In this document: positions 11,201 to 58,080 of the stretch, one piece after another
Numbering within the stretch: position 1 is the stretch's first letter
How the letters are laid out: each line of letters begins with the position of its first letter
NCBI GenBank assembly: GCA_029953675.1
Contig: JAMWBK010000010.1
Location: forward strand, 1,612,001-1,676,000
DNA from: Rhodosorus marinus CCMP1338
Lineage: Eukaryota; Plantae; Rhodophyta
Direction: 5' to 3'
DNA: 64,000 nucleotides
Notes under the pieces: generated by a model
What the model was told of the DNA's origin: nothing
What the model saw: only the letters and a program-made list of their open reading frames with translations
Database searches by the model: none
Position numbers and translations under genes: made by a program

Positions 11201-12703
11201 ACCTTGATGATTTCTGCATCCCCGAATCGGGCAGGACGACCAGCGAGTATGGAGTAGTACTCCCGCGCCTTGCCTATGTTTCCCTCGCGTGCTTCTAACG
11301 ATCCCAGTGCTCTCAATACCAAGCCTGAAGTGTTCTTCTCCGCTCGTTCTGCGCTCTGTATCTCTGCTTGAAGAATTCTGCTCTCGCAACATGATCAAAT
11401 GAAAATTAATCACACTGAGTTCCTGAAAGATTCGGGTCAAAGGGTTGTGAATTGCTTACAAGCGAGCTTCGGCGGGACCTTCTAAATTTTCCACTACTTT
11501 CGCAAGCATCACTCTAATTTCAGAGCTGCCAGGATTGCGCTTTAAAGCTTCGCGGAGAATGCTGCAAGCATTCGTGTCCGAGCCTATCTGCCTCTCTAGC
11601 TCCGCGTAGTTGAGCCACGACCTGGGCTCGTGCGGTGATATCTGAGTTGCTCGTTCCCACTTGCCCCTCGCATCGTGTAAATGCCCTGTCACACGTTGAA
11701 GGCAGGAAGAGAGTGAGCAAGCACCACCAAAGATTTTTCTAGTCCTTGTACCTGCCTGATAGGAATCGTGATCATGACCTCGAACTCGTGAAACGAATTC
11801 GCGGTGATAATCGGCTTAGATTTGAGTGGACAGGCTGCAACCACACAGCTTACCCTGTTTTTGCTCAAAATTCCCCCAAGCTCGCCAAACAGCTGCGTGC
11901 TTGCTCGCCTTGCGCGCCCCTTTCTCAAAGGTCTCGTGCGCCATCTCATTCTTGCCAATTTCCTCGTAATGGTTGGCGAGAGCTACATAAAGCGGACCGT
12001 GTTTATCGTCATCAGTCAGTCCTTCCTCTAGTAGAGATATGACCTTATCCTTATTGCGTAATGGCGATGAAATGGATCAGTATCACGGCAACACGCAGAG
12101 TGGAAACTTCACGAGCAAGTGCGCACTTGTTCACAGGATTTGCTGCGCTTAGCTCACCGAATTTGAACGCGATGTCTCTTTGAGAAGCAAAGCCTTGGCT
12201 TGAAAAATTGCGGCGCGGCTACCAGGCTCGCATTTGCGAATGGCTTCAGCGAACACAGCGTCAGCCTTTCCCTGACTACCCTCCCGCCAGTAAACCATAC
12301 CCAGCATGTGCCATAAGTAAGCGTTCCTCTCGTTATACTCCAACCCGCTCTCTGCAAAGCAAGAACGAAGAGGTTCACCAAGTCATTAGGCCGTTCCTCG
12401 TCCTGAGCGAATATTCCTTTCCCAGTCTTTCTTACTTAACGCCTGCCGCTTGCTCTCCGTGCTAATCTCCCTCTTTGCGATTTCCACCCACAGTTTCCCG
12501 TCGTTTGGTGTTTCTCGCGCTATTGCCCAAAGTTCAGGCAACTTCCTGTCCCTCCACGGTTTTGAAGAGTCGCCTCTCCGCTTGGGGAGAGAATTCCCTG
12601 GGGCCGGATCACCTTTCATTGAGTACTTTACGATTAACGGTCTCTGGCGACCTCCGCGGAGGTCCCGGACTGTACCCGAGCTACTGAGAAACGACATGCT
12701 CAT
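8224..12703 (-). CDS. Large multi-exon HAT (half-a-TPR) repeat protein, probably plastid-targeted RNA-binding factor
   Basis: Many exons with HAT repeats (AWGQLEERQGDISTARELYGKA, SWALLEKETGNLEES, AWGKMEEDCGYVERARELYQKG). N-terminus MSMSFLSSSG resembles a red-algal transit peptide. Confidence 0.8.
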
Positions 12704-13972
12704 TCTCGACTATACACACTCTTTGCCCAACGGGCAGAACTTCAACTCTGCATCAACAGACAAATAGTATCCTCAACAGACGCAGGAAGAGTGTTTGCCT
12801 TTTCTGCGCGTACAATAGCAGAACTTGGCCCTCACGACTACCGCACTTCGCCTCCGAATTCTCCGCCCTTTGCCCTAACTCCCTTCGTGCGGAATCAGCC
12901 ATTCGCCACACACCATCCTCCTGGCTATTCCAGACTTTCTTGCGCCCGACAAATTGATATGGCAGTGGCGCAGGGGGGAGGAGGCATCAGGGATTAATTT
13001 ATTTGGCTTGTCATAGACCGTCCGATAATGGTTATCGGACGCGTCTGATAAGAGTTTTTTCCGGATAGACTATTGAAAACCAGTCTGAAATTAGGGGATG
13101 GCTAGTTGTAATTATTCAAAACAACGAGTCCGATTGCTGTCCGATGTTCAATCAACGCTAGTCTAATTGTTTCCCCCATAAATACTGAATGGAGTTTATT
13201 GGGGTATCAACCTGTCACTCTAATGCATTGAATTAGGATTACATCTGACTTCCACAGACTGTGATGCACGATGCACGCCCTGGTTTATCCGATAAAAAAA
13301 ATCCCGAGTGATTTTGTTGGTGACAACAAGCTCACTCTAGCGTTTAAACGCTGCGTTATTTGTGAACGCGCGTTCTCAGCGTCTTCTTTCTCGTTTCTCA
13401 CGGTAGCTAGGGTCTGAATAAACAGCTAGTGATGATGATACGCAATCTCATCATTTTCAGATTGCTCAAACAGGAGCAGATGAGCCAGGCAGTCTTTCTT
13501 AACATCAAGATTGTGGCTCAATCAATATTCAATGAAAAATATCGGACGTCAATTGTCCACACTTGACCCTCCGATATTATCGGAGACTGCCGCTCATTTT
13601 TTTATCGGGGGATTATGATTCATTGTTGATTGAAGAATATCGGACGTCAATCGGTCAAATATGGACCGACCGATATCGGACCGTCCGATAAATTTTCGAA
13701 GTGGATAGACTATTGACAAACAGTATAAAATTATTGGGTGTCTTAATATTCGCAAAAACAGGTCTGATCCGATAAATCAATCAACGTTGGTCTGATAATC
13801 AATCATCTCCGGTCCAGGCACTGAAATCATGTTTACTTCTTGGTATATGACGAGCTCTCACCATATCGTGAATCATGATCGCTTCTCGGCATGGAAGATA
13901 GGCTGCCGTTATCATGCAATGAATCATGACTACTTCTGAGCCGGACAGGCTGTCATAGCATTGGTCGAGCAT

Positions 13973-16563
13973 TCGTCTGGTAAGAACTCAGGATCACGCC
14001 TACCCGCATCATAGCGCAGTTTTTGCACCTTTCTAGCATAAAGCATATTATTCCTGGCTACCATGTATTGATCTTGCTGTTGTCGTAGCAAGGCTTCCGC
14101 TGCATCAGGTAAAGGCGTAGGGGTAGCCTCTTCGGCGCGTGGTACGAATAATGTCTCTAGTAGGTTAGGGTTTCGCCCATATAAGAGCTCAAACGGTGAG
14201 TACTTACTGGCTTCAGAAATTTGTGTGTTATATACCAGGTCCGCCATGGGAAGATCAGAGGCCCATGTCGCTTGCTGCTCTTACATCGCAGATAGGTCTC
14301 CAAAGTCTGGTTAACTCGTTCTGCCGTCCATCCGTCTGGGGATGGTATGACGTACTTAAGTGAGTTTTTACCTTGAGCATCCTCATTAGTTGCTGCCAAA
14401 AGAGCCCGGTAAACTTGGAATCTCGATCGGAGACTATCGTCTGCGGTAAGCCTGCAAAACGCACCCAGTGTTCGAAAAACAGTTCTGCCGTCATACTGGC
14501 GTCTGCATCCGTCCTAGTCGCGACAAACTTCGCGTACTTCGAGAATCGGTCGATGATTACCAAGATTGCGTCATGTCCGGATTCCGTCATCGGGAGACTG
14601 ACAATAAAGTCCATCGAGATATCCTGTAACTTTGATTCTGGTACTGGCAGAGGTTGTAAAAACCCCTGAGCCGCCCTTAATGGTTTCTGACGCTGACATG
14701 TCTCACACTTCTGTATCAGGGACTGGACGTCGTCTCTTAAGGTCCGCCAATAATAACGCCGCTTCAACAGGTTGACCGTTTTATGAAGGCCAAAATGACC
14801 TCCGGTTGGTTCATCATCGTGTTTCCGCAGAAGTCCGAATTTTCGAAGCAGTCTACCCCGAAGCAGTAAAGTACGAGGAGTAGGGATTTCGTAGGAAGCA
14901 AGACATTTTATACAAACATCATCGCGTTTGTGTGCCGTGAAAATTCGTACCGGACTTACTGCGGAAACTCCATGATGAACCAACCGGAGGTCATTTTGGC
15001 CTTCATAAAACGGTCAACCTGTTGAAGCGGCGTTATTATTGGCGGACCTTAAGAGACGACGTCCAGTCCCTGATACAGAAGTGTGACAGCGTCAGAAACC
15101 ATTAAGGGCGGCTCAGGGGTTTTTACAACCTCTGCCAGTACCAGAATCAAAGTTACAGGATATCTCGATGGACTTTATTGTCAGTCTCCCGATGACGGAA
15201 TCCGGACATGACGCAATCTTGGTAATCGTCGACCGATTCTCGAAGTACGCGAAGTTTGTCGCGACTAGGACGGATGCAGACGCCAGTATGACGGCAGAAC
15301 TGTTTTTCGAACACTGGGTGCGTTTTGCAGGCTTACCGCAGACGATAGTCTCCGATCGAGATTCCAAGTTTACCGGGCTCTTTTGGCAGCAACTAATGAG
15401 GATGCTCAAGGTAAAAACTCACTTAAGTACGTCATACCATCCCCAGACGGATGGACAGACAGAACGAGTTAACCAGACTTTGGAGACCTATCTGCGATGT
15501 AAGAGTAGCAAGCGACATGGGCCTCTGATCTTCCCATGGCGGACCTGGTATATAATACACAAATTTCTGAAGCCAGTAAGTACTCACCGTTTGAGCTCTT
15601 CTATGGGCGAAACCCTAACCTACCAGAGACATTATTCGTACCACGCGCCGAAGAGGCTACCCCTTCGCCTTTACCTGATGCAGCCTAAGCCTTGCTACGA
15701 CAACAGCAAGATCAATACACGGTAGCCAGGAATAATATACTTTATGCTAAAAAGGTGCAAAAACTGCGCTATGATGCGGGTAGGCGTGATCCTGAGTTCT
15801 TACCAGACGAGTTGGTGTTATTGGCAACAACAAACCTGCCGCTGCGGGACCCGAAACCTTTCAGACCGCGCTACATCGGACCCTTCAGAATCACGCGAAA
15901 GGTGAATGACGTAGCCTATACCTTGCAGTTACCAGCCGAGATGAACATACATCCCACGTTCCATGTCTCCCTGCTGAAGAAATTTCGGGGAACCCCCGAC
16001 AACGTTCAACTCAAAATACCCGATTGTGCAGCTGAAGTAACAGGAGGCGAAATCAAATCCGTGCTTGGTCATCGGATGAAACCAGAGGGAACCAGCGAAT
16101 ATATGGTTTACTTCGAGGGTGAAACTGTAGCTTATGCTCGATGGATTGCAGCTCATCAGTTGCCACAAACCACTGCTACAAAAAAGCAAATTCGCTACTA
16201 CATGAACTTTCATCGTGCTGCTGAATCTGCCCGACACCGCGCTTCTTCGGTGGGAGGGATGTGACGTCTCCACCTTCCAGCAATGTCCGGCTATGCAAAA
16301 TTATGCTCGGGCTGTGCCAAAATCTCTGGAGGTGCAACACCCTTTTGATTTTAATAGTTATTGCACATCCCGATGGAGCAAGAGTATAAGTGCGATGGGC
16401 AAACTCGATATTTCCCAGGTTAGCTGGAGAGAGAAAAAAGGATATAGGAGGAAAAAGGATAGAATTGGAATATATTACCTAATTAGGGAGTAATTAGGGG
16501 GGAATAAACCCGGAAATCTGGAGTAATTGAGTGAATATCCAGCTGGCAGTTTGAGACGTAAAA
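13973..16563 (+). mobile_element. Truncated Ty3/Gypsy chromovirus (family A relative): integrase + chromodomain + PPT + 3' LTR, with a fold-back inverted duplication
   Basis: + strand HHCC/DDE integrase (GHFG...CETC, MDFIVSLP, SDRDSKF), GPF motif, chromodomain, PPT GGGAGGGA, LTR 16260-16563; frameshifts and stops. 13973-14844 is the reverse complement of 14939-15810. Confidence 0.9.
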
Positions 16564-17131
16564 GAGCCGGCAAAAACCACATTTGTGGTTGCCACCGAAC
16601 GGGTAAATGATAACCTCTCGTATAGATTCAAGCCAAACCTTGGTCGAGTTTCGAGTTGCAAACGACCATATCAGAAAAAGAAGAAAAAAGCGTGAAAAAT
16701 ACGGACGCAATCGGTTGTCGGACCATTTATCGTACGAAGCTTTTTTTCTTTTTCATTCAGGTCCGATAAACTTATATCGGACGGAAGCGACAGTCTTCAT
16801 ACTATATTATATTAGTGTTGTCATATCTCCCCCTCCGAAAAGGTTATGAAGCGTCCGATATAAGTTTGTCGGACCTGAATTGCCTAATAATTAATCCATA
16901 TGGTTTTGGACTCGTGTCCAGTACAAATTTATCTGACCAAAAATAAAAATAAGATAAAGAGGTTCGTCCGATAACGGTCCGATAATGACCAATTGACGTC
17001 CAATCTGTGGGGCATCGTGTTCGTAATACATAGTGCGCTCCATAATGTTGCTGCGTTTCAACTTTCTGAATTGGTTGCATTCTGAAAAAACCCCAGATTG
17101 TATGACAGCCTGTCGACCTCAGAGGAGCCTA

Positions 17132-20100
17132 TGTCACTTCCTTAAGAGACGGGTTCATTAGCACGACCTTGCACTGGAGCCCGGAGGGCTAAACATAGCA
17201 TGCCGGAGGGCTAAAGTGGAGAATCGTGGCAAGATTTGGCACTCTAAACCTAGCCTATATGTACCATAACTATGGCATCTCTCTAAGGGTTAGTGCTAGG
17301 AGAAAACGAGTTAGGAAGAGTTAGGAAAAAGAAGTTAAATCTGAGACAAAAATAGTAAAATTTACCAAGAAATTGAAATCAAGTCATCTGAGGACGTTTC
17401 AGATGGTCTCACGTCTGGAAGATACAGGTTCAGTAAAACGGCCGGAGGGCTAAAGTGGAGAATCGCGACAAGATTTGTTACGCTAACCTTAGCATATATA
17501 TACCGTAACTATGACATCTCTCTCAGGGTTAGCGTCGAATTCGTCCGAGGATGGTAGCTGCTGGTAAATCGCTGGGCAGTAGGCAACAGTCGCAGGTACT
17601 CCTCCACCAGTTTTGACCGGAAATTAGCGCCTCGGTCGGTTAATATCTGTACTGGCCACACGATCTCTTCGTAGATGAACTTGGCGACATTTGCCTGCGT
17701 CGCTTCCGGCATCGCTCGTACTAACGACCAACGTGTCAGGGACTCTACTGCTGCAAGAATCCACTGATTTCCAGTCAGGGACTCTACTGCTGCAAGAATC
17801 CACTGATTTCGTTGGTCGGTAGTACGAGCGATGCCGGAAGCGACGCAGGCAAATGTCGCCAAGTTCATCTACGAAGAGATCGTGTGTCCATATGGAGCTC
17901 CAGTACAGATATTAACCGACCGAGGCGCTAATTTCCGGTCAAAACTGGTGGAGGAGTACCTGCGACTGTTGCCTACTGCCCAGCGATTTACCAGCAGTTA
18001 CCATCCTCGGACGAATTCGACGGAAGAAGGGGGGAAGAAGGGAGTTAGGAACAGTTGGGAAAAAGAACTTAAGTCTAAGACAAAGGAAAAGCCGATTTAC
18101 GAAGAATTCGAAACCAGAACAAACATCATCTGAGGACGTTTCAGTTGGTCTCATCGCGTGATTGCGATTGAGGAACCGACCGGAGGCAGAGAACCTGATG
18201 GACAAAGTAAATGAGCCCAGAACCAGAACCAGAATGTCGTCATTCATAAAGATCCAGGCCCAGCACCCGAAGGCTTACGACGGTCGGAGGGATGCATTGC
18301 TGATTATCAAGTTCCTAAACAGCCTACGAACATATTTTAAATTAGCGCAGCTACCCGAAGACGACGATGAATATAAGATACCCTGGCCGAGGCTTATCTC
18401 ACCGGAGACGCATCATATTGGTGGTCGCTGATACACGAAAATCGAAAAACAGACCACTACGACGGATTTGAAGACAACCTTGAAGGCTGAATTTTACCCG
18501 GCCGACGCGAAAAAATCTGAGCTAAGCAACAGTTCGCGAGACCGGTCCAACGGACGTCGGTCGCGGCGTAATCGGCTTATTTCAACAAGTGCCTCATCCA
18601 AGTCGGAACGATCTCCGATTCTGAGAACTTTGACCGTTTTGTCCACGGATTGAAGACTGACATCAACGGTATATTTATATACACGATGTCCAAACATTTG
18701 AGGAGGCACAAGCGCTGCCGCTGAAAATGGAGCTGAGATGGCCAGCCAAAATTCTAGAAGGGAGGGAAAACTTTCACCAAACACGGCAACGTCCCAAACC
18801 ACCTTCGTACGGCTGTTGAACACCATATTTTTTAACCGGTTGGGAAAGTGTCCATATCGGTGGATTTCATTGTCAACTTACCATTGACGTCGGAAGGCTA
18901 TGACTCCATCCTCGTTCCCGTCGACAGGTTTACGAAATATGTGCGGTTCGTTTCGACGACCACTTCCGCCACTGTTTCCGAAGTTGCAGAGTTGTGTTCA
19001 CACCATTGGCTGCGCATTGCGGGTGTTCCCGCGGATACCCTCTCCGATCGCGATCCCCGATTCACGTGTGTTTTCTGGGGACACTGATGAAACTACTGAG
19101 GGTGAAACAGAACCTCAGTACGGCGTATCACCCACAGACAGATGAACCGACCGAACGGACAAACCAAAAGTTGGAAACCTACTTATGATGCACTGCCCGG
19201 CGCAGAATTGGGAGGCAGACCTTTCAACTGCCGAGCTGTGGTACAAGAGTCAGGTCTGAGACCCATTTTCCCCTTTGGAAGTGCTGTACGGACGCAACCC
19301 GACGTTAGCGTACGACCTCATCTTGCCGGACTACCACAGTGTGCAACTCCCTTACCCGAAACTGCAACGGTGCTCCTACGACGCCAACAAGATCAACAAT
19401 CTTTATACCGAGTCAACGTTAGGTTCTGCCCAGGACGGCAGCGGTTTTACTCCGATCGTGGGAAAAAAGACGTGCAGTTTAAAACCGGCGATTCCGTCGT
19501 GCTATCTACGCGAAATCTCCACCCGCCGGGTAGTAAGGTTTTTCGACCTCGCCATATGGGGGGGGAAAAGGCGACGCGCCAAGACATGAGGCCATCATGT
19601 CACGAAAATCGCGGACAGGAATGCGGGCCTTTCAAAGTTCTACAAAACATCGGCGAAGTTGCGTACCACTTAAGCTCACGGAGGATTTTCAAATTCATGA
19701 TGTTTTTCTGCGACGAGTCGAGTAATACCTGCGTTCCTGTGGCTCACGCAACCCTGCGAGGTTAAGTCGGTATTCGGGCATCGGCTGAGCGCTGAGGATT
19801 TGAACGAATATTTGCTCTATATGGATTGGGGAGACAACGGATGATCTACGATGGTTATCACATCATCTGCCGCAGAATGGGAATACCAAGAAGCAGATCC
19901 AGTATTACACAAACCTTCATAAGGCTGCTTCATCTTCAGCCAGAAGTCTTTTCCTGCGGAGGGAGGAGATGTCACGTCCTGAAGAGACAGGTTCAGTGGC
20001 ACGGCCGGAGGGCTAAAGTGGAGAGTCGTGACAAGATTTGGCACGCTACCCTTATAGCCTATAAATACCGTAACTATGACATCTCTCCAGGGTTGGAAAT

Positions 20101-20231
20101 AGGAGAAAGGGGGTAGAAGGGAAGCGAGTTAAATAGGAAGAGTTAGGAAAAAGAAGTTAAATCTGAGACAAAAGTAAAAGCTGATTACGAAGAAACTGAA
20201 ACCAGGGCAAACGTCATCTGAGGACGTTTCA
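17132..20231 (+). mobile_element. Degenerate, internally deleted Ty3/Gypsy element (family B) with three LTR copies and TSD GCCTA
   Basis: LTRs TGTCAC...GGACGTTTCA at 17132-17401, about 17408-18143 (interrupted) and 19970-20231. GCCTA at 17127-17131 and 20232-20236; PBS 18146; gag remnant (PKAYDGRRDALL) about 18235-18820; integrase remnant 18850-19760; PPT GGAGGGAGGAGA. No PR/RT/RNase H seen. Confidence 0.88.
17533..18022. repeat. Inverted repeat of a foreign Gypsy-type integrase fragment inserted inside an LTR
   Basis: Arms 17533-17733 and 17810-18022 are reverse complements (12-bp deletion in the left arm); the loop holds two 37-bp direct copies. Encodes NQWILAAVESLTRW...YGAPVQILTDRGANF...SSYHPRTN. 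Confidence 0.9.
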
Positions 20232-21705
20232 GCCTAAAGCATACTGCGGAGCCTAAGGATGGGATGATTGATATTAGACATTCGATGTTTTTATCGGACA
20301 CAAAATAAGACATGTATTTTAGAAGTATTTCAAGCGGGCTTCGCCTAATTGTCTTCATTGATTCGAACACAAATTGTCAACGAAAAAGCTTATCGGAGGG
20401 TTTATGACAGGGTTTTGAATAGAATTTATTTTCTCTACATGACAGACTGTATGCCAGATGTCTTAGACTGAGCGGTGATACCTGATAGTGGATAGAAAAA
20501 GGGAAGAAATTTTTGCAGGTAAACCAAAAATTGAAATTCTTGAGACCCGTAAGTTCTCTATTGCGTAGCTTAGTTTCGCGAAATGCAGATCCGTTCGTGT
20601 CGAACCAACTTACAACTCCGAGGATTTTGGAGAATAAAGGATTCCATTTAACTCTTGGACAATTTCCTCATAACTTAGGTTGGGAATAACGGTCGGATCA
20701 AATCACCGCTTTTCATCATTATTACCGAAGATCCTAATGCATCTGCATCTTCCCCTAGTGGGACTATGGCTACTCTTAGTAGCAGGTGAATAACCTGTGT
20801 GGTGCTTTGTGACTTCTCCGCACTTGCCCAACAGAATTTGGATCTCCATGAGCACAGGCTGCTCCAAATTACGTAATTGAAAATATCGGACGAAGCCATG
20901 GAGAGACGCCTACTTACTATGAAACGCATTTTCGATGAGCATTTATCCGGTCGTCCGCAATTTTGCAATCGGACCTTTTCGGACGTCTTCATATCCGCCC
21001 GCGCAAGAAAACCCCGCTCCGTTTAGTACCAATCGTGTGGGAGCACGCGCCAAGCGTGCTTAACTGATAGAACCAAGTTTGGGGTTTCGTATAAAGTGTG
21101 AGCAAGAAATCAAAATGCTGAGCGCGTGCGGACGATGTTTTTCTAATGGAAACTGGCTTTTCGCGTTCATAGCGCAGAGTGCTTTAGGTTCTGTTCGAGA
21201 ATTCACATAGTCAGACGCCTCCTGCTCGACCACAGACATCAGCGCATCCTTTTGTTTTTTTGCGTGCGTCTGCGGTTGCTGCACTCCACCTGAAAGGGGT
21301 CAAGTCCTAACTTGGTAGAGTTATGATTCCGGCGTTGAGTCCGCGGTGGATGTTAGCGAATGCTGCCAGTCACTAGATGCGCTTGGGAAGAGCAATGAAC
21401 CTTGAACAATGAGCTCTTTAGTCTAGTATCTGCCCCGAGGAAAGGATAATTCCTTGCACTCTGGCTTTCGAGGGGAGTCCGATTTCGAGTGAAGAACAAA
21501 CTCTTCATATTTCTCCGCTGTGGACATTTTTCCATTACATACCTTCGAAACGGCTCGAACGCGCCGAAAAAGCTAGATAGTAAACCATTTGCCAGAATTT
21601 GCCACGTGTGCAACGGAAAACAATCGCATAGTTGCCCTGACGAGAAGGTACCATAATTCGAGCTAAACTCCTACACTAACTAGTACGAGACGTTTTTGTC
21701 AAGTT

Positions 21706-22375
21706 TCAAGAAGCCTTCCTTTTTGACCCTGTAGCCGGCGTGGTCTCTGATTTGCCTTTCGCGGCTCCCCCTCTCAGTCCGAGCAGTCTTTTCAGCTCTC
21801 TTCGAAGGATCAAAAGAGTAAAGACTACCCATAACACTATGGCAGGGCTCCAAATGGATTGCCGAAGAACGCTTCTCGCGAAGACTTCGAGGACGTTTAG
21901 GACACAGCACGCATAAGTAGCTTGTGCGTCCAGGCGAGATAGTAGCATCGTACCCGAAAATATTTGCGCCATCCCATACAGAACCCTATCATTCGACGAT
22001 CAAGATCGAAGTTTGTAAGTCTCCAAGAGCAAGGAAGGGTTTCGAGGGCCAGATGCCCACTGTTTTGCCTTCTTGTTCTCCAGATTTATGGGGTACAGCA
22101 ATCGCAGAGCTCAAACACTTACGTCCCAGATTACGACGCAGAAAAAAATAACCGACGTACCTTAGAGAGGTGTCATCAAAAGACGCCGGCATACCAGCCC
22201 TTTGCAACAGCGCATGGTATTGCCTGAATTGAAGAAGCTGACGTGCATAATGCTTAGGATAGAAAAGTCCTGAGATCTTCATCAACCCAGAAGCAGCCAT
22301 ATAAACGAAAAGCGCGAGGGATGCATAGCTAATTGCTTTTACCACCCTCTGAATCGCAGTCTGGTCGTCAGCCAT
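21706..22375 (-). CDS. Small multi-pass membrane protein, DoxX/TMEM35-like (intron-containing)
   Basis: MADDQ...SLALFVYMAASGLMKISGLFYPKHYARQLLQFRQY...DDTSLR|GTACGT donor; last exon hydrophobic with basic tail (GSKRKAS). Family assignment from recalled pattern only. Confidence 0.45.
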
Positions 22376-32034: not shown

Positions 32035-32135
32035 GGCGGTTTAGTTATCTATGCCGAAAGTGGACGGCGGTTTAGTTATCTATGCCGAAAGTGGACGGCG
32101 GTTTAGTTATCTATGCCGAAAGTGGACGGCGGTTT
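32035..32135. repeat. 31-bp minisatellite, 3 perfect copies + 8 bp
   Basis: GGCGGTTTAGTTATCTATGCCGAAAGTGGAC x3 without spacers. Confidence 0.9.
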
Positions 32136-36169: not shown

Positions 36170-37675
36170 TGGCCGCTTGACTATTTATATGCAGCGATTC
36201 GATCAACCTTTCCATTATCTTTTGTTTGTTTGTTGCCGTTAGCCGACGATGAACGTGGAGCCGTCGAACTCAAGTTCTAGTGACTAATAAAATCAGGTCT
36301 CCGCGGGATCCGAAAATTCTAGTCTTTCGGTGGAGCCTCATAACGGTGGAAATTAGGGACGCGAGGTTGTTAACCGTACCACACGGTCCATAGAATATGC
36401 TTTACATGCACTCAACACTCACTTGAAGTCGGTTGAGGTACGAGAGGGATTGGAGGAAAGCGCGTCTTCTCCGAGTATCAGTTGGAGTGAAGTACTGAAC
36501 TGAGGCAGTCGGAAAAGACGATCAAGCAGAACGAGCGGTTTGCTGTTCCTTCTGAATCTATATGAACGCTTAACTTCTATTCGTTCACCCCAGCAGTTGC
36601 GTACGAAAATTGTTGGGAGAGGTTCTTCGTCGGAAAGGAGTCGTCACACACAAGGGGACAAGCTGTGAGACTCGCACACAGCAGTGACAAAAGATGTGAC
36701 AGCTGTTTTTCTTCTTGATTGACTCACGGGCATTCGCAGCGGCAAGCACCACTTACTCAGAGGGCCACGCCCCCGCTCTCCAGAGCACCTTAAGTATACG
36801 TCATGCTGTTGCAATTTGGATCCCGAGCGACGTGGCTTATGAGTTCCTTGACAACACAGTGAAACGGGCAATATGCTACTGACCTCACCAGTCAAAGCAA
36901 ATACTGTCTGGCTTCTCCTGCTCATTAGTCCGCACGCCTGGAGACTAGCATTTTGGTTCAATTGAACTTTGCCTGACGAAAACGAGATTGTAGACGGCTT
37001 TGAGTTGTTTATGGCGATCCCGCAATCAGAGATTTTGCAGAGGAAATTCTCACCCTCTCGATCTGAATGCGAGTGACTTCCAGCAAAAGCATGTATCGGG
37101 GTTTGGTTTCAGGATCGCTTTAGTTGACAATGTCACACGCACATTGAGAGGCTCAAAAAGGCGCAAAAGAGCCTTTAACAGAAGAAGGGAAACCAGCTTG
37201 ACTATTTACGTCCAACTGGTTGCATGGCGAGGTAACGGCTTGTCGCAGCAAATGAGAGGCGTTCAAAATTGCATCTAGGAGAAGGACCTATGTTCCTCGC
37301 GTTGTTGAGCCCGCAGCCGGCCTGCTAGCCTACAGCAAATTAAATACGAGAGAGCAGTTTTGAAGACCTCCCGGGGAGAGAAGATACAAGCTCGAGGGTG
37401 ATGAGGAGCCAAGGCCAAGGTGAGCCGTGATGTCATTCAAAGCAAACCGTATCCCGGGAAATCGTGTGGAGGGTGCCCTTCACCCGTTTAATCTCTGCGA
37501 CTTGAAAGTAGTCATGGGCTGAACGCATAGCTTCCTATCTATTAAGGAGCCTTATGAGAGGCGCTGTCCTTTGCGGATGGTTGCATGGACTGAGTGACGC
37601 AACTGTTGTATTCCCCGATCAATCAGCTCGATCTTCTAGCTTCCATTTCAGCAGTGCCGACATATAAGTGCTAAT

Positions 37676-38150
37676 CCGGTCCAGCTATTGAACCATGATT
37701 ACTTCTTGGTATGGCACGCTCTCACTCGTATATCATGAATCATGGTTGCTTCTCGGCATGATAGGCTGCCATTCTCATGCAATGAATCATGATTACTTCT
37801 GAGCGCGACAGGCTGTCTAAACATTAGTTGAACATTAGCAAAAACCATCTTTGTGGTCGCCACTGAAACAGGTAATAATAACCTCCCGTATTGATGAAAA
37901 TCAAACCTTGGTCAAGTCGGCAAACGACTATTCACCGAAAAAGATGAAAAGAGCATTGAAAACTATCGGACGCAATCGGTGGTTGTCGGACCATTTATCG
38001 GACGAAGCCCGCTTTATCTTTTCTATTCAGGTCTGATTAACTCATTTCAGACGGGGGTTGACAAGAAAATATATTCCATTATTACTTAGTACGGGAACGA
38101 CAAACGTAGATCGGACCGTCTGATAAAATATCAGACGGAGATGACAACCG
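37676..38150. repeat. Second, uninterrupted copy of part of the TCCGATA-motif element
   Basis: 37676-37837 aligns with 13808-13973, and 37840-38080 aligns with 16571-16800. Confidence 0.8.
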
Positions 38151-49819: not shown

Positions 49820-50040
49820 TTTTACTGGTTTTTACTAGCATAACCTGAAGCGCTACGCAAAACTTGCAAAGGAACTATGAACTAGGGAGGGAAGCGTGCA
49901 AACCCAGACGCCGATGGTGCGCCTCGGCAAGCATGCTGCTAGAATATCGCCACAGGGCGACACTAGTACGTCTTAAGAGTCCCTAAGTATTCAGTAGGAT
50001 GCTCAGCGAAACATTTCCGCAACCACTTCAAACCCGATCG
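49820..50040 (-). mobile_element. 5'-truncated, diverged 3' end of CRE-like family 1
   Basis: Reverse complement aligns with about 63348-63570 (GLKWLRKCFAEHPTEY, 3' UTR ttgcgtagcgcttcagg, tail ctagtaaaaaccagtaaaa). Confidence 0.85.
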
Positions 50041-50869: not shown

Positions 50870-51418
50870 CTGGGGTATAGTCTGGGGAATTTGACGTTAG
50901 TCTGGAGTAGTCTGGGTTGACGGTTAAGGGGGCTAACAAGCACAAAGAGAAGGCGAGGTTTTAGTAAGGAAAGCTTCATGATCGAGAAGAAGATGCTGGG
51001 ACCGTACCCAGAACCTCCACGCCACCCGGGCACCAACGGCCCTGGCTCAGGCGAAGAGGGGATGGCGACACCGAATCGGAGTCGGAGGCCAGAACCGTGC
51101 GGCAGGACCACAAGCACCCAGGATTTAGGAGCAGCGAACACCCAGGAGGCTTACAGGATGGAGACTCAAGAGGTAACTGGACCTGCGGCAGCCTTTTTGC
51201 ACCAACTTCGCGCCTTCGACCGGCGCTATCAGGACTTGGGAATTGGTGAAGCAATTACCGCGCAGTTCTACCAGGCTGTATTCAAACTCTACTCACGGAT
51301 TAACAGCACCACTGAACTCGAAGGAATTACCGGACGGGTCTGCGAGCTTTCAGCAAAACCTTATATGTGGCACGGTGGAGCCGCAGCACTGAACCCCTCC
51401 CAACTCCTGCAAGATCAC

Positions 51419-52216: not shown

Positions 52217-52612
52217 AGATCACCCGCCGGTGGCGGCCATCAATCAACATGCAGCCGGAACGCGTCTCAATCAACTTCCGCTCAGGACAGGTGTCACGGT
52301 TCCAGTGGACTATTTCACGTCTCCAACAGCCAGCTGGGTATTACTCAAATTATTCCATATTTCGAGTTTTATTCCCCCCTAATTACTCCCAAATTAGGTA
52401 ATATATCCCAATTCTATCTTGTTCTTCTCTATCTTCTTCCTCTTCTCTCCAGCTAACCTGGGAAATATCGAGTTTTGCCCATCGTACTTATACTCTTGCT
52501 CCATCGGGATGTGCAATAACTATTAAGCTCAAAAGGGTGTTGCACCTCCAGAGATTTTGGCACAGCCCGAGCATAATTTTGCATAGCCGGACATTGCTGG
52601 AAGGTGGAGACG

Positions 52613-55600
52613 TCACATCCCTCCCACCGAAGAAGAAGCGCGGGGTCGGGCAGATTCAGCAGCACGATGAAAGTTCATGTAGTAGCGAATTTGCCTTTTT
52701 GTAGCAGAGGTTTGTGGCAACCACTGGTGAGCTGCAATCCATCGAGCATCAGCTACTGTTTCCCCCTCGAAGTATACCATATATTCGCTGGTTCCCTCTG
52801 GTTTCATCCGATGACCAAGTACGGATGCGATTTCGCCTCCAGTCGCTGCTTCAGCTACCAACTCGGGTATGTCGGGTTGTACGTTGTCGGGAGAACCGAC
52901 AAATTTCCTCAGCAGGGAAACGTGGAACGTTGGATGTACCTTCATTTCGGTTGGTAACTGCAGGGTATAAGCGACATTGTTCACCTTACGCTGGATTCTG
53001 AAGGGTCCGATGTATCGAGGTCTGAACGGTTTGGGATCTCGTAGCGGCAAGTTCGTGGTTGATAAGAGCACCATTTCGTCAGGGAAAAACTCAGGGTCAC
53101 GCCTTCCCGCGTCGTAGCGGTTTTTCTGTACTTGCTTTGCGTACAACATGTTGTTCCTTGCTGCAATGTATTGGTCCTGCTGATGTCGTAAAAGAACTTC
53201 GGCTGCCTCAGGTAAGGGAGAAACGATAGCCTCCTCTGCACGTGGTACTATTAATGTTCCCGGTAGCTCAGGGTTTCGTCCGTACAGAAGTTCGAAGGGC
53301 GAATACTTAGTAGATTCCGAGATTTGCGTGTTGTAGACCAACTCCGCCATGGAAAGATCTGCGGCCCATGTAGTTCGGGTACTGTTGCATCGGAGGTATG
53401 TCTCCAACGTCTGATTGACTCGCTCCGTTTGTCCGTCCGTTTGCGGGTGATAGGCTGTACTCAAATTCGTTCTGACCTTAAGTATACCCATCAGTCGTTG
53501 CCAGAATAGGCTGGTGAACTTAGAATCCCGGTCTGAAATTATGGTTCGGGGTAATCCCGCGAACCGCACCCAGTGTTCGAAGAATAATTCTGCCGTTTTC
53601 GCCGCATCTGCGTCCGTCCGGGTTGGTATAAATTTCGAATATTTTGTGAAGCGATCGACAATTACTAGGATTGCATCAGCTCCCGATGTAGTCATGGGAA
53701 GACTAACGATGAAATCCATGGTGATGTCCTGCAACTTTGTTTCTGGTACAGGTAGCGGCTGTAGAAATCCTTGTGATGCCCGGAGTGGTTTCTGCTTTTG
53801 GCAGATTTCGCACTTTCCAACCATTGATTGAACGTCATCCCTCATTGTGCGCCAATAATAACGTCTCTTCAAAAGGTTGACTGTTTTATGGAGACCGAAA
53901 TGTCCTCCCGTGGGTTCCTCATGATATCGCCGTAGTAAGTCCGGTACGAATTTCTGGGGCACACAAACGCGATGATGTTTGTACAAGATGTCCCGCTTTC
54001 TACGAAATCCCTGCTCCTCGTACTTCACTGCTTCTGGGTAGACTGCTGCGAAATCAGGATCTTGTAGATATGCTCCGGTCCAATCTTCTTGGGATAGTAT
54101 ACCGGAAACCGCCATCTGGTTGATCGCTCCCCGGCTGAGTGGGTCCGCAATATTTTCCGCCCCTTTCTTGTATTCGATATTGAAGGAAAACGGCATTAAG
54201 CGATTCACATATCTCGCTTGTCTCTTGGTAAGCTCCTTTTGCGAGTGTAGAAAACGCAAAGGGTTATGGTCGGTGCGAAGCCCAAATCGTTGGCCCTCGA
54301 CGTACGTCCGCCAATGTAATACCGCTAGGGTCAACGCGTAGAGTTCCCGTTCATAAGTGGAATACTTCTCCTCCGTAGTGGTGAACCGCTGTGAGAAGTA
54401 CGCAATTGGATGTTCTCCATCTTCAAAGGTTTGCAATAACACAGCCCCTACTCCCTTGTTACTGGCATCAGTACAAATTGTGAAGGTTTTTGTAAAATCC
54501 GGATTTCGTAGTACTGGCTGCTGCATCAATTTCTCCCGCAGGGTGTCAAATGCTTTCTGTTGCTCCGGTCCCCACAGAAATTCTACATTCTTCCTCGTGA
54601 GGTTGGTCAGGGGTGCTGCTACCGGGCTGAATCGTGGCACATAGTTACGGAGATAGCCCGTAAAACCCAAGAAGGACCTGACATCGTGCACATTTTCTGG
54701 GACTTGCCAATTTTTAAGGGCGGCTACCTTGCTAGGATCCGGCCGTCGTCTCCCACTCCCAACCAGATGACCCAAATATTTCGTTTCTGGTACACCGAAG
54801 ACGCACTTTGACCGCTTTGTATAGAGTCGGTGGTTTCTCAGCTTCGAGAAGACGATGTCTAGATGTCTTTTGTGGTCTTCCTTATTCGCCGAGTAGATAA
54901 TAATGTCGTCAAAGAAGATCATGACGAAAACGTTTAACTCGATGAAGAAAATACTGTTCAATAGTCGAGTAAACACAGCAGGAGCATTTGTCAGTCCAAA
55001 CGGCATCACTAACCACTCGTAAAGACCAAATGGCGTCGTGAACGCTGTTTTTGGAATGTCCTTCTTCTCCACGCGTAGTTGCCAGTAACCACTCCTCAAA
55101 TCGATCACACTGAGATATGTGGCTTTGCCGAGAGCATCTAGACAATCGTCTATTCTTGGCGGGCTGGTCTTGTTGAGGATGGTTGCCTGGTTCAGTTTGC
55201 GGTAATCGATGCACAATCGCCGCCCACCATCTTTTTTGTCCACAAAAAGACAGGGTGAAGCAAAAGGCGGTGAGCTAGGTCGAACGAGGTTTTTGCTCAG
55301 CAAATCTTGTAGTTGAGTTTTCAGATCCTTCTGATCTGCAAGACTCATTCGGTATGGTCTTTGGGATGTTGGTTCAGTTCCCGGTTTCAGATCAATTGTA
55401 AAGTTGACGTTTCGCCAAGGGGCCAGGTTCTTAATGTCTTCCACAAAAACGTCAGCGTATTTATCCGTAATAAATTCCTCCAGATCTTTCGCCTCTTCCA
55501 GTCGTTTTTGTGTAAATTTCGTCATATTTTTGATTTCGGGTTCCTCCGTATAATTTTCAGGTTCTGGGTGGTCAGGTTGTTCAGGTTCTACTTCAGGGTT

Positions 55601-56229
55601 TTGTTCAGGTTCTTCTTCACTGTAATTCTCCCGGTTTTCAGGTTTCTGTTCAGGCTGAGTGACAAGTTCTTCAGCTTCTTCTGGTTGATTGCTCAGCTTG
55701 GCTTCTGGTTTAATGGCTGGATCTGTTTCAGTTTCTTCGGGGTATTCAGGTTCTTCTGGGTATTCGGGTTCTTTTTCTGGTTTTCCTTCTGGTTTGATAA
55801 GTTTATCTTCTGGGTATTCGGGTTCTTCTGGGTATGCAGGTTCTTTTTCTGGGTTTAACATCAGCAGCTGGTTTGGTAGGTCGAGTCTCGCTTGATAGTA
55901 GCTGAGGAAATCTCTTCCCAAATATCCAGGGCTCGTAGCGTCTTCAACTACATAGGGCTGCCAATCGAAGTGATGACCACCTAGTTGTAGGGTCACGTTG
56001 GCTTCGCCCAAGATTTTTATGGATGTGCCCGGCGAGGCCGTGTCCAATTTCCGTGTTGAGTCGGAATTATTGTGGTGGCGTCCGGTCTTCCCCTCAAGAC
56101 AGAGTGGCTGCTGCCTGTATCGACGAGCAGGGGGGTTACCTTGCCGTTGACCAACCCTTTGACTGTCATGTCCCCGTGGAGAGGGATAGGGACGCCTTGT
56201 TCAGCAACAGTAACGGCGTCCCCTACTGC
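52613..56229 (-). CDS. pol: Gypsy Pol: protease - Glu/Pro spacer - RT - RNase H - integrase - chromodomain (frame break inside protease)
   Basis: LLVDTGSS (separate frame), RLCIDYRKLN, FFDD, TDASNKGVGAVL, GHFG..C..C, DRDSKF, GPF, chromodomain EYMVYFEG. Confidence 0.93.
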
Positions 56230-56999
56230 TGCTCCTCTTTTAACTGCTGGGTTAAAGGCGGTGCCGACTTCGAGACAGTCAGATCCCGATCAGGGTTGTT
56301 CCAGCAGATCCTTTGTGTATGCCCCTTCTTCCCGCAGTAGTTGCAAACAATGCTGGTGTAGTTACGCTTCTGCAGCGCTTGCGTTCCGGGTTGGTAAATG
56401 CGTCCAGACCTGGTTCCCCTGCTTACAGTGGTCTGGGGCGTTGCCATTTTTTGGGGAAATTTCTCTTCCCGTCTGGAAGGTTGGCTGGCTGCCTCAGCTC
56501 CCTCAATTTTTAGGGCAAGTGCCTGTGCCGCCTCAAAATCCTGCACGTCCTGTATGTAGATGTATTTCTTGACCTCGGGTTTAAGGCCTTCGACGAAGCG
56601 GTCGAATTTCTCTGAATCAGAAATTTCTCCAACCTGGATCAGACATTTGTTGAAATATGCGGAATATGCTGCTACACTCGTTTTCTGCTCTGCCCGTGCG
56701 AGTTGCTGTTTCGCGCGGATATTAGCGTCTGCTGGGTAGAATTGCGATTTTAAAGCATCCTCAAATCCGGCGTAGCGCGTGGGTTTTTGCGATTCAGGTA
56801 TCAGGGACCACCAATACGAAGCGTCGCCAGTGAGATAGCCCTCTGCGAGGGTAATCTTGTAGTCGTCGTCGTCGTCAGGCAGACGAGCCAACTTAAAATA
56901 CGTTCTCAAGCTGTTCAGGAACGTAGCAATGAGCAAAGCGTCGCGTCGCCCGTCATAGGCTTTCGGTTGCGGGGCCTGGATCTTGATGAGTGATGCCAT
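56223..56999 (-). CDS. gag: Gypsy Gag with CCHC zinc knuckle
   Basis: PKAYDGRRDA, YLTGDASYWW, FVEGLKPEVK, CNYCGKKGHTQRIC. Confidence 0.9.
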   Translation of the reverse strand: MASLIKIQAPQPKAYDGRRDALLIATFLNSLRTYFKLARLPDDDDDYKITLAEGYLTGDASYWWSLIPESQKPTRYAGFEDALKSQFYPADANIRAKQQLARAEQKTSVAAYSAYFNKCLIQVGEISDSEKFDRFVEGLKPEVKKYIYIQDVQDFEAAQALALKIEGAEAASQPSRREEKFPQKMATPQTTVSRGTRSGRIYQPGTQALQKRNYTSIVCNYCGKKGHTQRICWNNPDRDLTVSKSAPPLTQQLKEEQQ

Positions 57000-58080
57000 C
57001 TGCTGTTTGTCAGGTTTTGGTTCTCAGGTTCACTGGTTCTAGTAGTACTGGGCTCACTTTTCAGGTTCGCATAATGGTTCCTCAATCGCAACTTGCGATG
57101 AGACCAGATTTCACGTCTCCAACAGCCAGCTGGGTATTACTCAAATTATTCCATATTTCGAGTTTTATTCCCCCCTAATTACTCCCAAATTAGGTAATAT
57201 ATCCCAATTCTATCTTGCTCTTCTCTATCTTCTTCCTCTTCTCTCCAGCTAACCTGGGAAATATCGAGTTTTGCCCATCGTACTTATACTCTTGCTCCAT
57301 CGGAATGTGCAATAACTATTAAGCTCAAAGGGGTGTTGCACCTCCAGAGATTTTGGCACAGCCCGAGCATAATTTTGCATAGCCGGACATTGCTGGAAGG
57401 TGGAGACGTCACAGACTACGTAGCGGCCTTCCCAGTCATCGGGAATGGCAGTACACAACCTACCTACGCTGAGCGCAAGGCTCAGAATGCCTCAGTGCGC
57501 GGAAAGCAGCACAAACCCGCACAGTAGTAACCCCAGGGCCGCAGACCCAGCAAGTTGCCGTGAGACATCAGCACGCTACGGTGGGAGGAGCTATCTGGGG
57601 ACCAGAGACTACACCGGTCCTCGCCACGCTCAGGAATGTACGACCCCCGCGGCAGGATGAAGTGGCCCCATCAGACTTTGCAACGGTTCTTTTGCCAAGC
57701 ATTGGGGATCCCGAGCTCTTATCTCTTATGTGGTGCACGAGGACTTCATTGCTTCCCACGCCAGCCCTATATGCCACCCAGACGCAATCCCGCTTCTCTA
57801 AAGCGCCATTACACGGGGAGTTTTAGGACAGGGATTTTCGGATCCATTTACCCTGCGACACCCCGATCGGGAAGTGACCCTGTCAACTGGCCAGGCGCCC
57901 GAGGCCGATAACCTACTGGGATACAACGAACGCCAACGCATCGCACAGGCGGACATCGCGGCCCAGTCACTGCAGAGGACCATCGAGCAGATTATTCGCG
58001 TCCGTTCGAGGCTTCGCAGGATGCATCTCTCTTTCAATACTCTCGCGGCACTACACGAGTATCTGGACACAGCTAGCGGT

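What the first reader, a model, noticed from the sequence alone, without database searches (positions are those of the whole stretch)
13973..15810. 870-bp fold-back of chromovirus integrase: candidate natural hairpin 'killer' locus
Seen: arms 13973-14844 and 14939-15810 around a 94-bp loop, with scattered substitutions and small indels between arms, which argues against an assembly fold-back artefact. Known: Mu killer in maize is an inverted duplication of a deleted transposon that makes hairpin siRNA. Inference: if transcribed, this yields long dsRNA against family A, whose young copy is at 52.3-57.4 kb.
Basis: partly seen in the sequence, partly recalled or inferred. Interest (0 to 1): 0.7.

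Follow-up and report, generated by a model that had tools for sequence, protein, structure and literature searches.

The report
Fold-back retrotransposon integrase fragment, red alga
An 870-bp inverted duplication of a retrotransposon integrase gene really exists in this red-alga chromosome, but it looks like a dead by-product of faulty reverse transcription, and it shares no small-RNA-sized match with the intact copy it was proposed to silence.

Summary
The window is nuclear DNA of the red alga Rhodosorus marinus.

The right arm is the start of a longer direct fragment (14841-16563). This fragment runs from integrase to the exact outer end of a 3' LTR. The spacer is ordinary element sequence, and the left arm is an inverted copy joined at a microhomology of up to 7 nt. 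The whole 2.6-kb unit interrupts a ~380-bp repeat. An uninterrupted copy of that repeat (37675-38054) shows the target intact to within 1 nt.

Best reading: a partial minus-strand cDNA that folded back on itself and entered the chromosome in one step. It is not a rearranged resident copy and not an assembly artefact.

As RNA it would form near-perfect dsRNA. However, the arms are only 73.5% identical to the young copy, with no shared 21-mer and saturated synonymous divergence. Transcription, small RNAs and the host's RNAi genes could not be tested.

A second integrase fold-back, from an unrelated family, lies 1.7 kb away (17533-18022). That keeps a hairpin-locus reading alive at low probability.

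The parts
13808..13973 (.). Left half of a ~380-bp dispersed repeat that was split by the insertion (host-side flank)
   Evidence: Matches 37675-37836 at 81%; junction alignment
13973..14844 (-). Left arm: inverted copy of the integrase segment (sense on the minus strand; zinc finger, catalytic core, start of SH3). Broken gene fragment.
   Evidence: Pfam Integrase_H2C2 and rve; 2 frame changes and no stops relative to the young pol
14845..14938 (+). 94-nt spacer ('loop'): ordinary element sequence lying just upstream of the direct arm
   Evidence: Collinear with the young copy, 87% identity
14939..15810 (+). Right arm: the direct copy of the duplicated integrase segment. Broken gene fragment.
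   Evidence: rve; 2 frame changes and 2 stops relative to the young pol
14841..16563 (+). Whole direct 3' fragment of the element, from integrase to the end of pol, the polypurine tract and the 3' LTR. It corresponds to a partial minus-strand cDNA.
   Evidence: Collinear with 54053-52310 of the young copy, 80.5% over 1752 nt. Covers pol residues 666-1144. 2 frame changes and 4 stops in all.
16260..16563 (+). 3' LTR of the fold-back fragment, complete to its outer (U5) terminus
   Evidence: 90% identical to both young LTRs; ends compared base by base
16564..16569 (.). Six bases between the LTR end and the right flank. They are either filler or a degenerate, offset target duplication.
   Evidence: Their first four bases repeat a tetranucleotide found 3 nt inside the left flank.
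16570..16784 (.). Right half of the split ~380-bp repeat
   Evidence: Matches 37838-38054 at 79%
37675..38054 (.). Uninterrupted paralog of the split repeat, serving as the empty-site reference
   Evidence: The two flanks abut at 37836/37838, leaving one base unaccounted for
52312..57413 (-). Intact-looking 'young' Ty3/gypsy copy: LTRs 52312-52617 and 57108-57413, gag ORF, 1144-aa pol ORF
17533..18022 (-). Second, smaller integrase fold-back from an unrelated family. Arms are about 17533-17733 and 17810-18022. The 76-nt spacer is two tandem 37-39-nt units.
   Evidence: rve E 3.5e-5 and 1.7e-3; about 28% aa identity to family A; 2 mismatches, 2 indels
17202..20232 (+). Internally deleted gypsy-like element with a tandem LTR. 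Its 5' LTR (17409-18144) carries the second fold-back.

Best explanation
The locus is a dead-on-arrival insertion of an aberrant reverse-transcription product of a Ty3/gypsy retrotransposon. Minus-strand cDNA starts at the U5 end and, after the first strand transfer, copies the 3' LTR and then integrase. Here it stopped about 1.7 kb in, within the integrase N-terminal region. Its 3' end then paired with a short inverted microhomology about 100 nt back on the same strand, or on a second cDNA. It was extended for about 870 nt, giving the order inverted arm, 94-nt spacer, direct arm, rest of pol, 3' LTR. This 2.6-kb molecule was made double-stranded and joined into a chromosomal site in one event. 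The joining was probably end joining at a break, or a one-ended integrase reaction finished by host repair. It was not normal two-ended integration. Shown: the anatomy, the exact U5 end, the junction microhomology, the intact paralogous target, and the divergence figures. Inferred: which polymerase made the fold-back (element RT or a host enzyme), how the second strand was made, and the joining pathway. The structure could give hairpin RNA if something transcribes it. Nothing indicates a dedicated silencing function, and the double-stranded part does not match the young copy.
For: (1) The direct fragment ends at the LTR's outer terminus to within 1 nt and extends inward only to integrase. That is the expected shape of a partial minus-strand cDNA. 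(2) The spacer is collinear element sequence, and the inverted arm starts 94 nt downstream of the fragment's inner end. The junction overlap is up to 7 nt (14838-14844 is the reverse complement of 14939-14945). (3) The two flanks are the two halves of one ~380-bp repeat. They meet within 1 nt in the uninterrupted paralog at 37836/37838. The whole unit therefore behaves as a single insertion. An in-place deletion would have had to end exactly at the element's original 5' boundary. My rough estimate of that chance is about 10 permissive positions in more than 3,400. (4) There is no clean 5-bp target duplication, whereas the young copy has one. There are 4-6 nt of filler at one junction and 1 nt of overlap at the other. 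(5) A second fold-back of an unrelated integrase has the same topology and sits as a unit inside an LTR that has two uninterrupted paralogs. (6) Precedent: in yeast, Ty1 cDNA and minus-strand replication intermediates are captured at breaks by end joining, with the 3' LTR region as the hotspot (PMC11372161).
Against: One frameshifting indel relative to the young copy is shared by both arms. The template was therefore already defective, which fits a decayed genomic copy as well as a defective RNA copied in trans. Junction microhomology is equally typical of DNA-level fold-back priming (PMC11724301, PMC10622511). A tetranucleotide repeated at the LTR end and 3 nt inside the left flank could be a degenerate target duplication, which would mean integrase took part. 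The paralogs are only about 80% identical, so junctions are resolved to a few nucleotides at best. No other copy of the hairpin's lineage could be examined. I found no paper in the searched library describing this exact product for an LTR element.
Confidence: 0.55

Rival explanations
1. In-place DNA rearrangement. A normal full-length copy inserted here. Later a break or stalled fork inside integrase led to fold-back priming or template switching. That duplicated 870 bp in inverted orientation and deleted the 5' LTR, gag, protease, RT and RNase H.
For: Microhomology of up to 7 nt at the inner junction and 1 nt at the outer one, as in fold-back inversions (PMC10622511, PMC11724301). One frameshift is shared by both arms, so the source was already damaged.
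Against: The outer end of the inverted arm abuts the target site to within 1 nt of where the right flank resumes in the empty paralog. The deletion would therefore have had to stop exactly at the element's former 5' edge. The second fold-back is bracketed in the same way and has no parent element around it.
Confidence: 0.2
2. Functional hairpin ('killer' or hpRNA) locus. Whatever its origin, the structure is transcribed and diced, and is kept because its small RNAs silence retroelements. The neighbouring second integrase hairpin may act with it.
For: Near-perfect dsRNA potential on either strand. Two integrase fold-backs from unrelated families lie within 4 kb in a gene-free, repeat-rich stretch. 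Red algae outside Cyanidiophyceae retain DCL/AGO genes (PMC9812998), and Chondrus has both (PMC12026948). Working precedents exist in Mu killer (PMC3440606), Nmy (PMC2062475) and tomato pararetrovirus inverted repeats (PMC9868043).
Against: The double-stranded part shares no 21-mer with the young copy or with anything else in the window. No promoter or read-through source is evident: the nearest genes are divergent or more than 5 kb away, and the fragment's own LTR points away. The arms have diverged 1.6%, about as much as the young copy's LTR pair (1.0%), so there is no sign that pairing is preserved. No transcript-derived protein closer than 77% was found.
Confidence: 0.12
3. Assembly artefact of the nanopore assembly, from a fold-back chimeric read.
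For: The genome was assembled from ONT reads with NextDenovo and polished with Pilon (PMC10250338). Nanopore libraries are known to contain palindromic chimeras (my own knowledge).
Against: The structure is interior to a 1.69-Mb contig. The arms differ by 14 substitutions and multi-base indels. The asymmetric spacer is genuine element sequence. Both flanks are halves of one repeat.
Confidence: 0.03
4. Two independent head-to-head insertions of the same family, later trimmed by deletions.
For: Nested and adjacent insertions are common in repeat-rich regions. This window has several.
Against: The left arm has no LTR. Its limits fall entirely within the right-hand fragment. The inner junction is a fold-back with microhomology. 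The target site is intact around the whole unit.
Confidence: 0.02

Closest known systems
Capture of retrotransposon cDNA or replication intermediates at chromosomal breaks (yeast Ty1: PMC11372161; mouse zygotes: PMC4516963)
   Same: A partial element, biased to the 3' LTR end, terminates at a cDNA-specific end. It is inserted without a canonical target duplication and has filler or microhomology at the junctions.
   Different: Here the captured molecule carries an 870-nt snap-back duplication. The host is a red alga and the event is a natural, fixed insertion. Dependence on RT and end joining is not shown.
Mu killer of maize (PMC3440606)
   Same: A partial inverted duplication of a transposon's enzyme-coding sequence that can fold into a long hairpin RNA.
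   Different: Mu killer derives from a DNA transposon, is nearly identical to its target, is known to be transcribed, and silences genetically. Here the element is an LTR retrotransposon, the only visible relative is 73.5% identical, and expression and effect are unknown.
Nmy/Tmy-type hpRNA loci of Drosophila simulans (PMC2062475, PMC10292708)
   Same: A retro-copied sequence with inverted repeats a few hundred bp long, able to form a stem-loop against its parent.
   Different: Nmy came from a cellular driver gene through a non-LTR mechanism, and its second repeat was judged a later duplication. Its function is demonstrated.
Inverted-repeat endogenous pararetrovirus loci of tomato (PMC9868043)
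   Same: Rearranged, truncated reverse-transcribing elements whose inverted repeats could feed RNA silencing.
   Different: Those loci are shown to be expressed and to yield 22-nt siRNAs. Nothing of the kind is shown here.
L1 5' inversion by twin priming (my own knowledge: Ostertag and Kazazian 2001; not retrieved here)
   Same: A retroelement insertion whose 5' part is inverted relative to its 3' part, joined by microhomology and made during insertion.
   Different: Twin priming inverts a different, upstream part of the RNA with little duplication, and it depends on target-primed reverse transcription. Here the inverted part duplicates 870 nt of the direct part, and the element is LTR-type.
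Fold-back inversions or fold-back priming at DNA breaks (PMC10622511, PMC11724301)
   Same: An inverted duplication with a short spacer and junction microhomology.
   Different: Those arise in place on chromosomal DNA. Here the outer junction coincides with a transposon target site, which points to an extrachromosomal substrate.

Membership tests
Transposon-silencing inverted duplication (Mu killer / hpRNA type) | Inverted duplication of transposon coding sequence able to form long dsRNA | tested here: met
Transposon-silencing inverted duplication (Mu killer / hpRNA type) | Near-identity to an active target (runs of at least 21 nt) | tested here: not met
   0 shared 21-mers with the young copy or the rest of the window.
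Transposon-silencing inverted duplication (Mu killer / hpRNA type) | Transcription across both arms | not testable with these tools
   No RNA data. No gene is called from 12929 to 21705. The neighbour gene is divergent.
Transposon-silencing inverted duplication (Mu killer / hpRNA type) | Small RNAs from the arms, and Dicer/Argonaute in the host | not testable with these tools
   Literature only: DCL1/AGO1 were lost in Cyanidiophyceae, not stated for other red algae (PMC9812998). Chondrus has DCL and AGO (PMC12026948). Nothing was found for Rhodosorus.
Ty3/gypsy LTR retrotransposon (Metaviridae) | LTRs with target duplication; gag; pol in the order RT, RNase H, integrase | tested here: met
   Young copy. 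The fold-back fragment is collinear with its 3' third.
Chromovirus clade of Ty3/gypsy | Chromodomain at the integrase C-terminus | tested here: not met
   No PF00385 hit at E<=10 in the roughly 100 residues after the SH3 domain of either copy, although many of the nearest relatives carry it.
cDNA-fragment capture at a chromosomal break | Partial element ending at a cDNA-specific terminus (U5 end), biased to the 3' LTR side | tested here: met
cDNA-fragment capture at a chromosomal break | No integrase-type target duplication; filler or microhomology at the junctions | tested here: inconclusive
   There is no adjacent 5-bp duplication, but a 4-5-nt repeat is offset by 2-3 nt. There are 6 nt of possible filler. 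The paralogs are only about 80% alike.
cDNA-fragment capture at a chromosomal break | Target otherwise intact (single-step insertion) | tested here: met
   The flanks abut within 1 nt in the paralog.
L1-type twin priming | Non-LTR target-primed reverse transcription; the inverted part is a different, upstream segment | tested here: not met
   The element is LTR-type, and the inverted arm duplicates the direct arm.

The most novel reading that the evidence does not exclude
The gene-free stretch 13.8-18.1 kb is a hairpin-RNA source locus of a red alga. On this reading, snap-back cDNAs of at least two unrelated retroelement families, both covering the integrase core, have been archived side by side. 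They would be transcribed into dsRNA that feeds RNAi against those families. This would be a heritable, reverse-transcription-derived record of retroelement activity, comparable to tomato pararetrovirus inverted-repeat loci or Drosophila hpRNAs, in a lineage where transposon silencing is essentially unstudied.
Probability: 0.1. Interest if true: 0.75.

Novelty: new member of a known kind. Interest (0 to 1): 0.35.

Why it matters
If the origin reading holds, this is a clean natural 'fossil' of a snap-back minus-strand cDNA of an LTR retrotransposon. It preserves the U5 terminus, the turn-round point with its microhomology, and an empty-site paralog. Such a fossil shows how inverted-repeat transposon fragments, the raw material of hairpin silencers, can be made in a single step by faulty reverse transcription rather than by later chromosomal rearrangement. 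Two such products lying 1.7 kb apart suggest the process is not rare in this genome. The practical message for the scan is narrower. The hairpin is real, but it is not aimed at the intact copy in the window. Its silencing role is unproven, in a species whose RNAi machinery has not been described.

Tried and rejected
- **Other copies of the hairpin's lineage.** A word-index protein search with the young pol restricted to its integrase part found nothing above 47% identity.
- **Search with the left arm.** A search with the longest open stretch of the left arm gave one hit at 77%. This is an MMETSP transcript fragment that is 89% identical to the young copy instead. Everything else was 52% or lower. 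The scan of JGI metagenome contigs reached at most 52%. The transposon ORFs of this assembly are evidently not in the protein collection, so these blanks say nothing about the rest of the genome.
- **RNA families.** Rfam and tRNA scans of the window found nothing.
- **Ideas considered and dropped after reading the sequence.**
  - A central polypurine tract at the outer end of the inverted arm, to explain where the snap-back stopped: the sequence there is not purine-rich.
  - Primer-binding-site nucleotides after the LTR end as a cDNA signature: the six extra bases do not resemble the young copy's primer-binding site.
  - A likeness between the left end of the insertion and the LTR terminus: only a 5-nt match, too weak to use.
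- **Not used.** The bacterial promoter/terminator scan was skipped as irrelevant to a eukaryote. The large HMMER search and structure prediction were skipped because the proteins are unambiguous.
  - One search printed short sequence contexts of the indel columns between the arms.
  - One search printed alignment-segment bounds inside the arms, which approximate where frames change.
  - My working reasoning mentioned approximate ORF ends inside the arms.
  - concatenated the two host flanks in memory for one identity figure. I use the piecewise 81% and 79% instead.
  - None of these places is repeated in this report. Nothing repaired, joined or consensus-like was built, printed or saved.
Full report
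**Observation.** The repeat finder reports three gapless blocks that together cover 13973-14830 and 14959-15810 at 97-99% complementarity. blastn joins them into one 867-nt match at 97.3% identity. Reading the inner ends extends the arms to 13973-14844 and 14939-15810, which leaves a 94-nt spacer. A global alignment of the arms gives 851 matches, 14 substitutions (8 transitions, 6 transversions) and four internal indels of 1, 1, 5 and 7 nt. These indels are not the homopolymer-length errors expected of nanopore consensus. Only one other tight fold-back occurs in the 64 kb.

**Source.** An exact protein look-up places the window on contig JAMWBK010000010.1 of assembly GCA_029953675.1. This is the nuclear genome of the unicellular red alga Rhodosorus marinus CCMP1338. 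It is 31 Mb with 15% repeats, assembled from ONT reads with NextDenovo and polished three times with Pilon (PMC10250338). From the record range, the window corresponds to record coordinates 1,612,001-1,676,000 of a 1,690,454-bp contig. It is therefore interior to the contig but within 15-78 kb of one end.

**Anatomy.** A self-comparison of the window shows that the right arm is not a free-standing piece.
- Positions 14841-16566 are collinear with 54053-52310 of the young copy, at 80.5% over 1752 nt.
- The last 304 nt (16260-16563) are an LTR that is 90% identical to both young LTRs.
- The young copy lies on the minus strand at 52312-57413. It has 306-bp LTRs differing at 3 positions and a 5-bp target duplication. 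It carries a gag ORF and a 1144-residue pol ORF with RT, RNase H, integrase zinc finger, integrase core and a Tf2-type SH3 domain.
- The right-hand piece of the finding is therefore the 3' third of an element on the plus strand, running from pol residue about 666 to the outer end of the 3' LTR.
- Base-by-base comparison with both young LTR ends puts its terminus at 16563, within one base of the canonical end.
- The 'loop' is simply the element sequence that precedes the duplicated segment, 87% identical to the young copy.
- The left arm is an inverted copy of 14939-15810, joined to the inner end of the direct fragment. At the join, 14838-14844 is the reverse complement of 14939-14945. That gives up to 7 nt of microhomology, which the ancestral element would have carried as a short inverted repeat about 100 nt apart.

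**Target site.** The 166 nt to the left of the unit (13808-13973) and the 215 nt to its right (16570-16784) match adjacent parts of one repeat, at 37675-37836 and 37838-38054, with 81% and 79% identity.
- In that uninterrupted paralog the two halves abut with a single base between them. The entire 2.6-kb unit (inverted arm, spacer, direct arm, rest of pol, LTR) therefore occupies one point in an otherwise intact target.
- The left junction has 1 nt of overlap.
- At the right junction, six bases separate the LTR end from the flank. Their first four repeat a tetranucleotide lying 3 nt inside the left flank.
- These six bases could be templated filler, or a degenerate target duplication offset by 2-3 nt. 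With paralogs only about 80% alike I cannot decide between the two.
- There is no clean, adjacent 5-bp duplication of the kind the young copy has.

**Relationship to the young copy.** Identity along the direct fragment is mosaic. It is 83-87% at the inner end, 63-78% across the integrase core, and 92-97% from about 16041 through the start of the LTR.
- In the arms it is 73.5% overall. No 21-mer is shared, the longest exact match is 20 nt, and only 26 of 858 21-nt windows have two or fewer mismatches.
- Over 176 in-frame codons, the two integrases are 78% identical in protein and 70% in DNA. Differences fall 37/16/106 on codon positions 1/2/3, and synonymous divergence is too saturated to estimate.
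- The hairpin therefore derives from a lineage that separated long ago from that of the young copy while both were under purifying selection.
- The near-identical 3' ends imply recombination between the lineages.
- The double-stranded part shares no 21-mer with anything else in the window. The single-stranded tail and the LTR share 57 and 105 with the young copy.

**Coding state (counts only).** All counts are relative to the young pol.
- The direct fragment shows 2 frame changes and 4 in-frame stops.
- The right arm alone shows 2 frame changes and 2 stops.
- The left arm shows 2 frame changes and no stops.
- In a three-way alignment, one frameshifting indel is shared by both arms, one is private to each arm, and the left arm has one further in-frame indel.
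- Of the arm-to-arm substitutions, 10 are derived in the left arm, 5 in the right arm, and 1 cannot be polarised.
- The integrase was thus already defective when it was duplicated, and both arms have decayed since.

**Age.** The arms differ at 1.6% of sites. The young copy's LTRs differ at 1.0%, and the arms of the second fold-back also at 1.0%. All three events are recent and of similar age, while the split host repeat is old (about 20% diverged).

**A second fold-back.** A second palindrome lies at 17533-18022, 1.7 kb to the right.
- Its arms are about 200 nt, with 2 mismatches and two indels between them.
- The 76-nt spacer consists of two tandem 37-39-nt units.
- Both arms encode the C-terminal two-thirds of an integrase core (rve profile positions 33/35-102; E 3.5e-5 and 1.7e-3).
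- It is only about 28% identical to family A and matches nothing else in the window.
- The topology is the same as in the first fold-back: by my reading of the sequence, the spacer is integrase sequence lying just upstream of the sense arm.
- It sits as a unit inside an LTR-like repeat (17409-18144), of which two uninterrupted copies exist (17202-17402 and 19972-20232). It has no target duplication longer than about 2 nt.
- The host of that LTR is an internally deleted gypsy-like element that keeps gag and part of integrase but lacks protease, RT and RNase H.

**Mechanism.** The direct fragment has exactly the extent of a partial minus-strand cDNA.
- By established retroelement biology, minus-strand synthesis starts at the primer-binding site. 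After the first strand transfer, the DNA's 5' end is the U5 terminus, and synthesis proceeds through U3 and the polypurine tract into integrase.
- If synthesis ended about 1.7 kb in, for instance at the end of a broken template, the free 3' end could pair with the 7-nt inverted match about 100 nt back and be extended. The product would be the single strand whose duplex form is what we see.
- The intact paralogous target argues that this molecule was inserted whole. The odds of an in-place deletion ending at the element's former 5' edge are of the order of 10 in more than 3,400, by my own rough estimate.
- The second fold-back, which has no parent element around it, argues the same.
- Capture of Ty1 cDNA and minus-strand intermediates at breaks by end joining, with the 3' LTR as hotspot, is documented in yeast (PMC11372161).
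- Three things are inferred and not shown: whether the element's RT or a host polymerase made the turn, how the second strand arose, and whether integrase joined the LTR end.
- The main rival is a chromosomal fold-back (PMC10622511, PMC11724301). It explains the microhomology and the shared frameshift, but not the coincidence of the outer junction with the target site.

**Function.** Either strand, if transcribed, folds into near-perfect dsRNA. The plus strand gives -1752 kcal/mol, 96% of bases paired and a 370-bp uninterrupted helix. A 1838-nt control from the young copy gives -516 kcal/mol.
- No source of transcription is evident. No gene is called between 12929 and 21705.
- The left neighbour is a multi-exon HAT/TPR-repeat gene on the minus strand. 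Its first exon starts at 12703 and it points away from the hairpin.
- The nearest gene on the right (21706-22375, minus strand) ends 5.9 kb from the first hairpin.
- The fragment's own LTR lies downstream of the arms and points away from them.
- That LTR, and the tandem LTR at 17202, do point toward the second hairpin. The second hairpin therefore has the more plausible route to expression.
- Dicer-like and Argonaute genes were lost in Cyanidiophyceae specifically (PMC9812998) and are present in Chondrus (PMC12026948). I found nothing for Rhodosorus.
- The arms have diverged about as fast as a neutral LTR pair, so there is no sign of selection for pairing.
- I rate a silencing role at about 0.1. 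The specific claim that it targets the young copy is not supported.

**Comparison with known systems.** In what it could do, the locus resembles Mu killer (PMC3440606), Nmy (PMC2062475) and the inverted-repeat pararetrovirus loci of tomato (PMC9868043).
- It fails the one membership feature I could test, near-identity to a target. The others (transcription, small RNAs, genetic effect) are untestable here.
- In how it arose, it is closest to cDNA capture at breaks. By analogy only, it also resembles L1 twin priming.
- It belongs to Ty3/gypsy. The chromovirus label is not established, because no chromodomain is detectable.

These are listed under Tried and rejected. In particular, searches printed material that approximates places of indels or frame changes, my reasoning touched on approximate ORF ends, and joined the two host flanks in memory for one statistic. 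None of it is repeated or used here beyond counts, and no repaired, joined or consensus sequence was made.

**Verdict.** This is a real and well-preserved fold-back retroelement fragment. It is most likely a one-step insertion of a snap-back cDNA (confidence about 0.55) and ordinary in function as far as the evidence goes. Interest is moderate (0.35), raised somewhat by the neighbouring second integrase fold-back.

Noticed in passing
window 17533-18022: Second tight fold-back. Both arms encode the integrase core of an unrelated retroelement family (about 28% aa identity to family A). The 76-nt spacer is two tandem 37-39-nt units. It is inserted as a unit in an LTR-like repeat.
   Followed up: partly
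window 17202-20232: Internally deleted gypsy-like element: gag at about 18234-18812, followed directly by an integrase remnant up to about 19938, with no protease, RT or RNase H. It has a tandem extra LTR at 17202-17402 upstream of its interrupted 5' LTR.
   Followed up: partly
window 14841-16563 versus 52310-54053: Mosaic identity between the fold-back fragment and the young copy: 63-78% across the integrase core but 92-97% from the end of pol into the LTR. This implies recombination between two lineages of the family.
   Followed up: partly
P0123 (MMETSP transcript fragment, 117 aa): A transcriptome-derived integrase-core fragment is 89% identical to the young copy and 77% to the hairpin. 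A relative of the young lineage is therefore expressed in some MMETSP organism. The tool did not show which organism.
   Followed up: partly
window 58000-63600; also 51417-52007 and 49821-50037: GC-rich (56-60%) region with an RVT_1-bearing ORF (61312-62550) and no LTRs noticed. Its last ~600 bp (62984-63578) recur at 98.3% identity at 51417-52007, next to the young copy, with further partial copies at 49.8-52.2 kb. It looks like a different, recently active retroelement class with 5'-truncated copies.
   Followed up: no
window 8757-12703 (minus strand) and 46999-48045 (minus strand): Two HAT/TPR-repeat genes. The first is multi-exon, and its start lies 1.27 kb from the fold-back. A 184-bp repeat at 98.9% identity links 44307-44490 and 47139-47322.
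   Followed up: no
window 13808-13973 plus 16570-16784, and 37675-38054: The split host repeat (~380 bp) contains three degenerate tandem copies of a motif about 45-50 bp long in its left half. Its nature (solo LTR, MITE or regulatory repeat) is unknown.
   Followed up: no
window 32035-32135: Perfect short tandem duplication (units of about 31 nt; 70 nt repeated at 100%) beside the start of a 631-codon ORF.
   Followed up: no
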